64,000 nucleotides of DNA from Blepharisma stoltei ATCC 30299 (taxonomy: Eukaryota > Protista > Ciliophora), in assembly GCA_965603825.1 (NCBI GenBank), contig CBFDEM010000027.1:310001-374000 (forward strand), read 5' to 3'. Each line of letters starts with the position of its first letter. Within the stretch, counting starts at the first letter, position 1. Shown piece by piece: positions 29,079-31,156 of the stretch. Below the pieces are notes generated by a model. The model did not search any database. It was not told the origin of the DNA and saw nothing but the letters and a program-made list of their open reading frames with translations. The position numbers were made by a program, and so were the translations under genes.

Positions 29079-29429
29079 TTAAGTTAATTTTGGCTTGATC
29101 TCGCCTGACTCCAAACCTTTTCGAAGCTCAGGCACTCCTCCTAAATATTTCCCATTGATGAATATATAAGGGGGAAATTTTTTTTCAGTTAACTCTGCTA
29201 ATGCGCAATGAACCTGATTATCATCGTTTAATTTGTCAAGCTCGAAATACTCAAATGCAATTGAATGCTTTCTCATCAAATTTTTTGCTTCTATTGATTT
29301 TTCATCTTTTGACTTGGAATAAATAACAACATCATATTCCTTTATTTGATCATTCACTACTTGTAAAAAAGGATTTTCAAATTCTTGAATTTCTTCATGA
29401 CGATCTTGTCCAGAGCAATGGCAGCCCAT
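29079..29429 (-). CDS. Glutaredoxin-fold protein without active-site cysteines, N-acylated
   Basis: VVIYSKS....S.EAK.L, YFELD, PYIFINGKYLGG; MGCHCSG N-terminus. Confidence 0.8.
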   Translation of the reverse strand: MGCHCSGQDRHEEIQEFENPFLQVVNDQIKEYDVVIYSKSKDEKSIEAKNLMRKHSIAFEYFELDKLNDDNQVHCALAELTEKKFPPYIFINGKYLGGVPELRKGLESGEIKPKLT

Positions 29430-29671
29430 ATTGAAAATTTTATATAAAATTTTCGTGTTTTATAAATATATTGAAATATGTATTGGCTTGTAAAAAAAAA
29501 TGATTTTCGTGGAAAGCTTCATATTGAAGAACTGCTAGATTGAGAAATTCAAATTGGTAATACATTTAGGTGCTCTTTTGGTAGTTGAATTTTAAGAAAT
29601 TAGCTGCAAATATGGCTCTGGCAGCAGATAAGTATTAAGCCATATCAAAATTCCAATTATAATAATTTATT

Positions 29672-29783
29672 TTATATGAAGAGATTTAGCCAAAGATGAA
29701 AATCATGTGAAAAAGCCGAGATCTGAAAACAATCTGATGATAAACAATAATGATCCTTGATCTGCACTGCTTGACCTGATTAT
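29672..29783 (+). ncRNA. Tandem box C/D guide RNA(s), putative U2 snRNA 2'-O-methylation guide (scaRNA9/mgU2-19/30-like)
   Basis: Unit 1: C ATGAAGA 29676-82, D' ATGA 29696-99, degenerate C' ~29705-11, D CTGA 29723-26. Unit 2: C TGATGA 29735-40, D' ATGA 29750-53, C' TTGATCT 29757-63, D CTGA 29776-79. Guides TTTAGCCAAAG, GCCGAGA and TGCTTGA are complementary to the conserved U2 5' end. Confidence 0.7.
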
Positions 29784-29830
29784 TTATTATATTCTTAATT
29801 ATATCTAACTGTTAGCTTATGCTTCAAATT

Positions 29831-31156
29831 CTAAGATATAGGAAAAACATTGACATCAGAAACTTTGCAAACCATTTCAAGTAAATATTTGCGTGACGGA
29901 TCCAATGAAGCTGGTGCCAAGCTCGGCATGCTTTCTAATGGCATCATTAATTGCAAGTAGTTTAAGTTTGGTTGCGTCTGCACATCATCCCAATATGCTT
30001 GCACTGATGGGCAAAATACACTCGTCATTGCTCCTTTTTGGATCTCTTGTGTCATCGCTTTCATGCAGGGATCATTCGGCCCTGCAAGTGCTCGCAGATG
30101 TGGTGTAGTGTGGGTCTTATCAATTCTGTTTTTCCTTATTTCTAGTAAATTGTTCGAAAATTTGGGCTCATTTTTTTCAGCTGGCAAAAACTGCTCTAAA
30201 TTGATGCCGATTTCCTCAAGAGTTTTATGTGCGGTTTGTGCTAAACTTACACCTTCGTTGTTTTTATATTCATTTAGGTCAAAATTTTCGATAAGACGCC
30301 TTGCAGGTGGCAAAGTGGTAGAATTTTGGTCTGCTTGGATAGTGTTAACGACCATCATGACAGAAATGACGGTTGCAAGCGCTAAGGTAGCTCCTTTAGC
30401 AACTTTTGAAAAATAAGGCTGCTCGTCTTTCCCCATGTGTATCTGAACAAGCTGATTTTTCAAGTACGTATTCTCAGCTTGAATTTGTTTTAATCTGTAT
30501 TTTAAGCTGTTATTTTGTTCAGCTAGGAGCTTATTTTCCTCCTCCAATTGGCTGACGAAGGCCTTTTTCCTGTCCCTGCTTTGTTGTGCAGAAATTCTGT
30601 TTCTTATCATTTGTTGTAGTTTTCTTCGCTCGTTTTCTGGCATGTCTTTGTTTTCAGCCAGCATTTCTTGTTCTTCTTTAAGTTTCCTTACTGCTTCACT
30701 TTCATTTGCCCTCCGTTTTGCATGCTCTCTTTTAATGACTCTTTTTGATTTATCTGATGCATTTTTGTAGTTTTTTAAGTCTTCGACGTTTAGGTTTCTA
30801 CATTCTTCACATACAGTCATAGACGAAAGGACTGGGGCGTTGTCATTGCGCTTGCGTTTTTTTCTGATCTGTGAAGGGTCCTCAAGCTTTACGATGTTTT
30901 TTTGGCAAATCGAGCATAAAGCTGTAGGAGTGGAGTCTGCTGGGATGTAGTCTAAGGAAGATTTGGAAGAAAAGTCTGAAGAGAAAAAGTTTTCAGTAAG
31001 CTCGAGATCTAAACCCAAGTCTGTGTCTGCATGAAGCCAGTCCATATTCAGATCTTCATTTTCGAGCGGTGATACAGTCGTTGAAACCTTTTCTTCATAA
31101 AATGAAGAGGATTCAGACATGCAATATTGAAAACCTTTTGTATCAAAATCTTCCAT
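29831..31156 (-). CDS. Membrane-tethered bZIP transcription factor (ATF6/CREB3/bZIP28-like)
   Basis: Acidic N-terminus, basic region RNRISAQQSRDRKK + leucine zipper, hydrophobic GATLALATVISVMMVV, then RRLI; TAG stop. Confidence 0.8.
   Translation of the reverse strand: MEDFDTKGFQYCMSESSSFYEEKVSTTVSPLENEDLNMDWLHADTDLGLDLELTENFFSSDFSSKSSLDYIPADSTPTALCSICQKNIVKLEDPSQIRKKRKRNDNAPVLSSMTVCEECRNLNVEDLKNYKNASDKSKRVIKREHAKRRANESEAVRKLKEEQEMLAENKDMPENERRKLQQMIRNRISAQQSRDRKKAFVSQLEEENKLLAEQNNSLKYRLKQIQAENTYLKNQLVQIHMGKDEQPYFSKVAKGATLALATVISVMMVVNTIQADQNSTTLPPARRLIENFDLNEYKNNEGVSLAQTAHKTLEEIGINLEQFLPAEKNEPKFSNNLLEIRKNRIDKTHTTPHLRALAGPNDPCMKAMTQEIQKGAMTSVFCPSVQAYWDDVQTQPNLNYLQLMMPLESMPSLAPASLDPSRKYLLEMVCKVSDVNVFPIS

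What the first reader, a model, noticed from the sequence alone, without database searches (positions are those of the whole stretch)
29672..29783. Hidden tandem box C/D RNA predicted to methylate U2 snRNA at G19 and A30
An intergenic ~105 nt carries two compact C-D'-C'-D units. Against the conserved U2 5' end (human numbering, ...UCUCGGCCUUUUGGCUAAGAUCAAGUG): the D' guide TTTAGCCAAAG (29685-95) pairs with 15-25 and its D+5 base faces G19. The unit-2 D guide TGCTTGA (29768-74) pairs with 27-33 and D+5 faces A30. Gm19 and Am30 are the pair guided by vertebrate scaRNA9 (mgU2-19/30), itself a double C/D RNA. In addition GCCGAGA (29715-21) pairs with 7-13 (D+5 = C10, one base from known Gm11, a discrepancy) and CTTGATCT (29756-63) pairs with 24-31. 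Four U2-complementary tracts in 100 nt are unlikely by chance. With 15-nt introns it cannot be intron-hosted, so it must be independently transcribed. The distal guide (GCACTG) fits canonical U2 poorly, which predicts either short pairing or a U2 diverged next to the branch-recognition sequence.
Basis: partly seen in the sequence, partly recalled or inferred. Interest (0 to 1): 0.85.

Follow-up and report, generated by a model that had tools for sequence, protein, structure and literature searches.

The report
Conserved twin guide RNA for U2
This stretch between two genes of the ciliate Blepharisma stoltei holds a real, conserved pair of very small box C/D guide RNAs; the first almost certainly directs methylation of the splicing RNA U2 at G19, while the proposed second U2 site, A30, is better served by a sister gene on another contig.

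Summary
Window 29676-29779 (+) carries two minimal box C/D units of 51 and 46 nt, joined by 7 nt.

The element is single-copy. It is a 74%-identical island in otherwise unalignable intergenic DNA when compared with a relative whose neighbouring protein is only 66% identical. In that comparison 35 of 37 box positions and 12 of 13 positions of the first guide are kept, while spacers and linkers drift.

- **Unit 1, D' guide:** U2 G19 is the best target in both species (11 and 10 bp). No other such guide was found in the genome.
- **Unit 2, D guide:** it pairs with U2 A30 by only 5 Watson-Crick plus 2 G-U pairs. Its best match is the U1 stem-loop I loop (9 bp, A33).
- **U2 A30 guide elsewhere:** a 48-nt paralogue on contig 62 carries a clean 9-bp A30 guide. 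A third paralogue on contig 33 fits U5 G37.
- **CTTGATCT:** this is the C' box of unit 2, not a guide.
- **GCCGAGA:** this fits 5.8S C22 better than U2.

Expression was not shown. Earlier unchecked notes of this scan report other ~50-nt and tandem C/D units in this genome.

The parts
29676..29682 (+). Unit 1 box C (AUGAAGA; AUGACGA in the relative)
   Evidence: 6 of 7 positions identical. Only position 5 varies; the GA dinucleotides are kept.
29683..29695 (+). Unit 1 D' guide, complementary to U2 15-25; fifth base before D' faces G19
   Evidence: 11 bp in the window and 10 bp in the relative, the top target in both; 12 of 13 positions identical; no other guide of this kind with a box C in the genome.
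29696..29699 (+). Unit 1 box D' (AUGA)
   Evidence: 4 of 4 identical. All six units of the family use AUGA.
29700..29713 (+). Linker and degenerate C' (GUGAAAA 29707-13)
   Evidence: not conserved in sequence or length. In the relative the UGA lies 3 nt nearer to box D.
29714..29722 (+). Unit 1 D guide; the conserved core is CCGAGAU
   Evidence: 5.8S 18-26 (C22) gives 9 bp in the window and 7 in the relative; U2 7-13 (C10) gives 7 and 6; the conserved 7-mer finds an equal match in 23% of shuffles, so the target is unresolved.
29723..29726 (+). Unit 1 box D (CUGA)
   Evidence: 4 of 4 identical.
29727..29733 (+). 7-nt linker between the units (12 nt in the relative)
29734..29740 (+). Unit 2 box C (CUGAUGA)
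   Evidence: 7 of 7 identical.
29741..29749 (+). 9-nt spacer, probably not a guide
   Evidence: 3 of 9 identical; no target shared by the two species.
29750..29753 (+). Unit 2 box D' (AUGA)
   Evidence: 4 of 4 identical. Same in the paralogues.
29757..29763 (+).
   Evidence: CUGAUCU in the relative. CUGAUUG and CUGAUAG at the same place in paralogues that carry different guides.
29764..29775 (+). Unit 2 D guide (GCACUGCUUGAC)
   Evidence: U1 30-38 gives 9 Watson-Crick bp (A33); U2 27-33 gives 5 Watson-Crick + 2 G-U (A30). In the relative the guide pairs with U2 26-35 (10 bp), with the fifth base on A29.
29776..29779 (+). Unit 2 box D (CUGA)
   Evidence: 4 of 4 identical. Messenger contigs of the convergent bZIP gene end at 29782-29799.

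Best explanation
Window 29676-29779 (+) is a single-copy gene for two minimal box C/D guide RNAs set head to tail (51 nt, 7-nt linker, 46 nt) in Blepharisma stoltei.

Each unit would fold its C/D and C'/D' boxes into kink-turns, bind the usual core proteins (Snu13, Nop56, Nop58, fibrillarin), and place the target nucleotide that pairs with the fifth guide base before D or D' in the methyltransferase site.

- **Unit 1:** its 13-nt D' guide pairs with U2 nucleotides 15-25 and directs 2'-O-methylation of G19.
- **Unit 2:** it belongs to a three-gene family of 46-48-nt guides with one scaffold (C, 9 nt, AUGA, UCY, YUGAUNN, 12-14-nt guide, CUGA). Its sisters are aimed at U2 A30 (contig 62) and U5 G37 (contig 33).
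- **Unit 2 guide:** in B. stoltei it has drifted from the ancestral U2 27-35 complement. It now fits the U1 stem-loop I loop best and U2 A30 only weakly.

Shown: sequence anatomy, conservation, complementarity, uniqueness. Inferred: transcription, processing, protein binding, methylation.
For: 1. Boxes and guides are in place. The native U2 is canonical.
2. An orthologous element lies next to the orthologous bZIP gene in a relative (L013:2879-2988, minus strand; neighbouring protein 66% identical).
   - It is 74% identical (z = 11 against random window segments), while the upstream spacer aligns no better than shuffled sequence.
   - 35 of 37 box positions and 12 of 13 first-guide positions are kept, while spacers and linkers change in sequence and length.
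3. In a box-constrained scan of rRNAs and snRNAs, U2 G19 is the top target of the D' guide in both species.
4. Of 40 motifs in the window of the form C-like box, 11-15 nt, NUGA, only this one has an snRNA duplex of 10 bp or more.
5. Genome-wide, 52 matches to the pattern for this guide core followed by NTGA were found, and the 43 sequences I inspected held no other G19 guide with a box C; the single look-alike lies in an open reading frame.
6. Two paralogues share the scaffold. Their best or near-best snRNA targets are U2 A30 (9 bp) and U5 G37 (10 bp).
7. G19 and A30 of U2 are guide-directed sites in vertebrates, and their equivalents in plants and (A30 only) fungi (PMC7960923, PMC2685112, PMC2780460). 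That U5 G37 is a methylated site in human U5 is from my own memory.
Against: - No RNA was seen. The only runs holding part of the stretch are contigs that cover the convergent bZIP messenger and stop at 29782-29799.
- There is no snRNA-type upstream element (TCCCWTAA) within 250 nt.
- Terminal stems are weak and not conserved.
- Box C of unit 1 and both D' boxes are non-canonical.
- Only two species could be compared.
- Each guide match taken alone is only modestly improbable (2% of shuffles against snRNAs, 10% against all targets).
- The fifth-base rule gives A29 in the relative but A30 in the window and in the contig-62 paralogue.
- The contig-62 guide also fits SSU rRNA A486 (10 bp).
Confidence: 0.7

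Rival explanations
1. One reading: one twin RNA methylates U2 at both G19 and A30, as vertebrate scaRNA9 does.
For: - The fifth base of the unit 2 D guide faces A30.
- The two guide positions just 5' of CUUGA (opposite U2 U32 and G33) differ from the relative by transitions that keep pairing as G-U wobbles; the positions beyond them lose pairing.
- The relative's unit 2 guide is a perfect 10-mer to U2 26-35.
- All unit 2 boxes are intact.
Against: - There are only 7 bp with 2 G-U pairs in B. stoltei.
- The match to U1 is stronger (9 bp).
- A separate gene has the clean A30 guide.
- The register in the relative points to A29.
Confidence: 0.25
2. Unit 2 was retargeted after duplication. It now methylates U1 A33 in the stem-loop I loop, using the heptamer GAUCAAG that U1 and U2 share.
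For: - There are 9 contiguous Watson-Crick pairs with U1 30-38, from guide position 2 to 10, with the fifth base on A33.
- All four guide bases 5' of CUUGA differ from the relative's, and all four match U1.
- The boxes stay intact although a paralogue covers A30.
Against: - 1.5% of shuffles reach an equal snRNA match, and 14% reach one against all targets.
- To my knowledge no methylation is known in this U1 loop in any organism.
- The U1 of the relative is unknown.
Confidence: 0.2
3. The unit 1 D guide is a working 5.8S rRNA guide (C22), which would make unit 1 a dual snRNA and rRNA guide like Neurospora CD29.
For: - There are 9 Watson-Crick pairs from guide position 1 in the window and 7 in the relative. 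This is the best target by the minimum over both species.
- 1% of shuffles reach the 9-mer match.
- CD29 guides U2 Am31 and 5.8S Am42 (PMC2780460).
Against: - The conserved core is only 7 nt, and 23% of shuffles match as well.
- In the relative only 6 nt separate the likely C' box from box D.
- No methylation is known to me at this 5.8S position.
Confidence: 0.25
4. The element is not an RNA gene. It is a conserved DNA element, such as a terminator or promoter piece of the flanking genes, that only looks like C/D boxes.
For: - It lies 3-20 nt beyond the 3' ends of the bZIP messenger contigs.
- No RNA was seen.
- No Rfam family scores above its threshold.
Against: - Conservation follows the box and guide pattern exactly.
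- Two unlinked paralogues with other neighbours share the scaffold but carry different guides that fit known snRNA sites.
Confidence: 0.04

Closest known systems
Vertebrate SCARNA9 (mgU2-19/30)
   Same: It has two box C/D domains on one gene. It is the guide for U2 Gm19 and Am30 (PMC7960923). Here the first domain is aimed at the same G19.
   Different: - There is no sequence homology (no Rfam match).
- This element is about 104 nt, whereas as I recall SCARNA9 is several hundred nt.
- It is intergenic.
- The A30 guide at this locus is degenerate, and a separate gene holds the clean one.
- Cajal-body signals were not assessed.
Arabidopsis snoR127 (Gm20/U2) and snoR125 (Am31/U2)
   Same: They are box C/D guides for the G19 and A30 equivalents of U2, held on separate genes (PMC2685112). 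Likewise in B. stoltei the clean A30 guide is unlinked to the G19 guide.
   Different: The plant RNAs are 138 and 200 nt. These units are 46-51 nt.
Neurospora crassa CD29
   Same: It is a box C/D RNA that guides U2 Am31 and also a 5.8S site (PMC2780460). Unit 1 here pairs with U2 and has a possible 5.8S guide.
   Different: The U2 site differs (G19 here), and so does the 5.8S site. CD29 is 101 nt and intronic.
Archaeal C/D sRNAs (from my own knowledge)
   Same: They are about 50 nt in total, with short fixed spacers and a C'/D' pair closed by a loop of a few nucleotides.
   Different: This is a eukaryotic nuclear gene with snRNA targets. One spacer is only 9 nt and seems not to guide.
Tetrahymena TtnuCD snoRNAs
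   Same: They are ciliate box C/D RNAs, often clustered and mostly without a terminal stem. Some are predicted to guide U2, U4, U5 and U6 modification (PMC3273799).
   Different: The Tetrahymena upstream element AAACCCATAA has no clear counterpart here. The targets listed in that paper's supplement could not be read.

Membership tests
Box C/D guide RNA (snoRNA/scaRNA class) | Box C (RUGAUGA) near the 5' end and box D (CUGA) near the 3' end | tested here: met
   Unit 2 is canonical. Unit 1 box C varies only at position 5. All boxes are conserved in the relative.
Box C/D guide RNA (snoRNA/scaRNA class) | Internal D' and C' boxes | tested here: met
   D' is AUGA in all six units. C' is clear in unit 2 and the paralogues and degenerate in unit 1.
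Box C/D guide RNA (snoRNA/scaRNA class) | Short terminal stem joining the 5' and 3' ends | tested here: inconclusive
   Reading the flanks gives only 2-5 A-U pairs, not kept between species; the consensus fold predicts no stem joining the ends. Most Tetrahymena C/D RNAs also lack one (PMC3273799).
Box C/D guide RNA (snoRNA/scaRNA class) | Guide of about 9 bp or more next to D or D', with the target opposite the fifth base | tested here: met
   Unit 1 D' guide: 11 and 10 bp to U2, on G19. Unit 2 D guide: 9 bp to U1 or 7 bp to U2.
Box C/D guide RNA (snoRNA/scaRNA class) | Stable RNA bound by fibrillarin, Nop56, Nop58 and Snu13 | tested here: inconclusive
   The runs available cover only the neighbouring messenger. 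Protein binding cannot be tested here.
SCARNA9 (mgU2-19/30) family | Sequence and structure homology to the family | tested here: not met
   No Rfam family scores above its threshold. Only weak matches to unrelated C/D families appear (E > 0.7).
SCARNA9 (mgU2-19/30) family | Guides for both U2 G19 and A30 on one RNA | tested here: inconclusive
   The G19 guide is strong. The A30 guide is 7 bp with 2 G-U here, and is a clean 10-mer shifted to A29 in the relative.
SCARNA9 (mgU2-19/30) family | Cajal-body localisation signal | not tested
   No model for such signals in ciliates is available.

The most novel reading that the evidence does not exclude
A guide RNA changed its target from one spliceosomal RNA to another. 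After duplication of a U2 A30 guide, the tandem copy in B. stoltei was re-aimed at A33 in the U1 stem-loop I loop (from my own knowledge the U1-70K binding loop), through the heptamer GAUCAAG shared by U1 and U2. This would predict a U1 methylation not known elsewhere.
Probability: 0.18. Interest if true: 0.6.

Novelty: new member of a known kind. Interest (0 to 1): 0.45.

Why it matters
I found no snoRNA annotation for Blepharisma in the library searched.

- These loci give the first concrete candidates for snRNA-directed methylation guides in a heterotrich ciliate, a group with 15-16-nt introns.
- They suggest that guided methylation of U2 G19 and A30, known in vertebrates with equivalent sites in plants and (A30 only) fungi, also reaches ciliates.
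- The units are among the smallest eukaryotic C/D RNAs (46-51 nt). That makes them handy minimal substrates for work on how a eukaryotic C/D particle is built.
- The drifted unit 2 guide offers a testable case of target change after gene duplication.

Tried and rejected
- **Rfam:** only weak C/D matches on the region, none above threshold.
- **BLAST in the genome:** the element found only itself. The paralogues appeared only with box and guide patterns.
- **RNA evidence:** four runs hold only contigs of the convergent bZIP messenger, ending at 29782-29799. This is uninformative for a small RNA without a poly(A) tail.
- **U2 pseudogene on the minus strand:** rejected, because the tracts are not colinear with U2.
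- **Extra U2 tract 29705-14 (10 bp to U2 86-95):** not conserved in the relative.
- **U24-like tract 29759-69 (11 bp to LSU 1305-15):** not next to a box and not conserved.
- **snRNA promoter element TCCCWTAA:** none near the locus. Look-alikes at 29425-33 and 29637-46 are unconvincing.
- **Consensus fold:** no supported stem.
- **Synteny:** no element beside the bZIP homologues in Stentor, three metagenomic ciliate contigs, another Logan contig, or the B. stoltei paralogue.
- **Metagenome pattern scan:** one chance bacterial hit.
- **Pattern for an SSU A28 guide:** no match.
- **Look-alikes inside open reading frames:** L083, L090, L091, L094 and L043 were rejected.
- **Protein search with the contig-62 neighbour:** nothing found, so no orthologue of that paralogue could be fetched.
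- **Supplement of PMC3273799:** not held.

Full report
**What is in the sequence.** Window 29660-29800 reads, on the + strand, as two compact box C/D units.

- Unit 1: box C AUGAAGA (29676-82), a 13-nt guide (29683-95), D' AUGA (29696-99), a linker with a degenerate C' (GUGAAAA, 29707-13), a 9-nt guide (29714-22) and box D CUGA (29723-26).
- A 7-nt linker follows.
- Unit 2: box C CUGAUGA (29734-40), a 9-nt spacer, D' AUGA (29750-53), UCC, C' UUGAUCU (29757-63), a 12-nt guide (29764-75) and box D CUGA (29776-79).

The units are 51 and 46 nt long. The element lies between two minus-strand genes. One is a glutaredoxin gene that starts at 29429. The other is a bZIP gene whose stop codon is at 29831. 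A paralogue of the bZIP protein is named by its source as Blepharisma stoltei.

**The native targets.** I took these from the same genome:
- U2: L001:1501-1691 (160 bits), plus a variant with a different stem-loop I loop (L002)
- SSU and LSU rRNA and 5.8S (L005:1277-1419)
- U6, U5, U4 and U1

U2 is not diverged next to the branch-recognition sequence. All four complementary tracts exist as described.

**Chance.** Complementarity alone is not compelling.
- Coverage of a 112-nt stretch by exact complements of U2 1-45 is highest here on the + strand. One other place in the 128 kb of both strands ties it.
- Composition-preserving shuffles of the first guide reach an equally good snRNA duplex in 2% of trials, and 10% when rRNAs are included.
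- Of 40 motifs in the window of the form C-like box, 11-15 nt, NUGA, this is the only one with an snRNA duplex of 10 bp or more.

**Conservation.** A Logan contig (run SRR24908292) carries a bZIP protein 66% identical to the window's. Just past that gene, on the opposite strand as in the window, lies the same element (L013:2879-2988, minus strand).
- The C/D region is 74% identical (83 of 112 columns), with z = 11 against random window segments.
- The upstream spacer aligns no better than shuffled sequence.
- Element by element: 35 of 37 box positions are identical, the first guide is identical at 12 of 13 positions, and the unit 1 D guide at 7 of 9.
- In contrast, the 9-nt spacer of unit 2 is identical at only 3 of 9 positions, and both linkers change in length (14 to 15 nt, 7 to 12 nt).

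This is the pattern expected of a working C/D RNA and not of a DNA signal. Box C of unit 1 differs only at position 5 (A or C). From established knowledge of kink-turns, that is the position that tolerates change.

**Targets.** I scanned all rRNAs and snRNAs, requiring a continuous duplex that includes the fifth base before the box.

*Unit 1, D' guide.* U2 G19 is the best target in both species (11 and 10 bp). The runners-up are weaker or start only at the fifth base.

*Unit 1, D guide.* The conserved core CCGAGAU fits 5.8S 18-26 (C22) with 9 bp in the window and 7 in the relative. It fits U2 7-13 (C10) with 7 and 6 bp. The conserved 7-mer finds as good a match in 23% of shuffles. In the relative only 6 nt separate the likely C' box from box D. 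I leave this guide unresolved.

*Unit 2, 9-nt spacer.* It has no target shared by the two species.

*Unit 2, D guide.*
- In the window the best match is U1 30-38 (9 Watson-Crick bp, fifth base on A33). U2 27-33 gives only 5 Watson-Crick plus 2 G-U pairs (A30).
- In the relative the guide is a perfect 10-mer to U2 26-35, but the fifth base falls on A29.

Only UGAUCU is kept in the relative, and the paralogues have CUGAUUG and CUGAUAG there.

**Paralogues.** A genome-wide pattern for a clean A30 guide next to CUGA gave 14 matches. One is a 48-nt C/D unit on contig 62 (L035:183-230) with the scaffold of unit 2. Its guide pairs with U2 27-35 by 9 Watson-Crick pairs, with the fifth base on A30. That guide also fits SSU A486 (10 bp, one G-U), so its target is not fully unambiguous.

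A scaffold pattern then found a third member on contig 33 (L041:1483-1528, minus strand). Its guide pairs with the U5 loop I sequence (10 bp), with the fifth base on G37.

Looser scaffold patterns added only hits inside open reading frames with no good targets.

U2 G19 and A30 are guide-directed methylation sites in vertebrates, with equivalents in Arabidopsis and, for A30, in Neurospora (PMC7960923, PMC2685112, PMC2780460). That U5 G37 is methylated in human U5 is from my own memory. Each match alone is seen in about 2% of shuffles. Three independent guides that all land on such sites are very unlikely by chance.

A search for other G19 guides gave 52 matches to the guide-core pattern; I inspected 43 sequences. 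Only the window's has a box C in place. The one look-alike lies in an open coiled-coil reading frame.

**Most likely working.** The locus encodes two minimal C/D RNAs.
- Unit 1 directs U2 Gm19 through its D' guide.
- Unit 2 descends from a U2 A30 guide. In B. stoltei that job is most likely done by the contig-62 paralogue.
- The tandem copy keeps intact boxes, so it probably still works, either weakly on U2 A30, on U1 A33, or on both.

Whether the two units stay joined or are cut apart is unknown. Transcription must start on the + strand within the spacer, because no + strand gene lies upstream. I found no clear promoter: the snRNA genes of this genome carry TCCC(A/T)TAA at about -55 to -65 and a TATA box at about -30, and neither is present here in that form.

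**Gaps.**
- No RNA evidence. The four runs that hold part of the stretch give contigs of the convergent bZIP messenger that end at 29782-29799, 3-20 nt from box D of unit 2.
- Only two species could be compared. No syntenic copy was found beside bZIP homologues in Stentor or other ciliate contigs. One metagenome scan gave a chance hit.

**Comparison and novelty.** In function this is like vertebrate SCARNA9, Arabidopsis snoR127 and snoR125, and Neurospora CD29. It is not a sequence member of any Rfam family. Its size and geometry resemble archaeal sRNAs. Earlier unchecked notes of this scan describe other ~50-nt and tandem C/D units in this genome, so compactness and tandem layout seem to be the local norm. 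Tetrahymena snoRNAs were already predicted to guide U2, U4, U5 and U6 modification (PMC3273799). I rate it a new member of a known kind, of moderate interest.

Noticed in passing
L035:183-230 (G000:C62:679282-679329, +): A 48-nt box C/D unit, paralogue of unit 2. Its guide pairs with U2 27-35 (fifth base on A30) and also with SSU 482-491. It ends 43 nt before the ATG of a 330-aa ORF on the same strand.
   Followed up: partly
L041:1483-1528 minus strand (G000:C33:266613-266658): A 46-nt box C/D unit with the same scaffold. Its guide pairs with the U5 loop I sequence (10 bp), fifth base on G37. A run of seven T follows it.
   Followed up: partly
L001, L002, L007-L011, about 110 nt upstream and 50 nt downstream of each snRNA gene: All snRNA genes share an upstream element TCCC(A/T)TAA at about -55 to -65 and a TATA-like box near -30. 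U1, U2, U4 and U5 are followed by a CTTCAA(T)-like 3' box.
   Followed up: partly
L011:1501-1661: A second U1-like gene (55.9 bits, below the Rfam cut-off) with a changed 5' splice-site recognition sequence (AAUUACAAUG in place of ACUUACCUG). It has an intact upstream element, TATA box and 3' box, so it may be an expressed variant.
   Followed up: no
L002:1501-1692: A second U2 gene (127 bits) whose stem-loop I loop reads CCAAA in place of UUUU. The G19 guide pairs with it by only 7 bp.
   Followed up: no
window 29612-29647: An 8-bp inverted repeat (ATATGGCT ... AGCCATAT) around a 20-nt loop, about 30 nt upstream of box C. It is not conserved in the relative.
   Followed up: partly
window 29681-29685 and 29718-29722: The motif GAGAU occurs just after box C and just before box D of unit 1 and is kept in the relative. 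The two copies could extend the kink-turn stem (G-C, A-U, tandem G-A, U-A). This would be another reason for the conservation of the CCGAGAU core.
   Followed up: no
window 29782-29799: Contigs of the convergent bZIP messenger end here, which gives a 3' untranslated region of about 35-50 nt that abuts the guide RNA gene on the other strand.
   Followed up: partly
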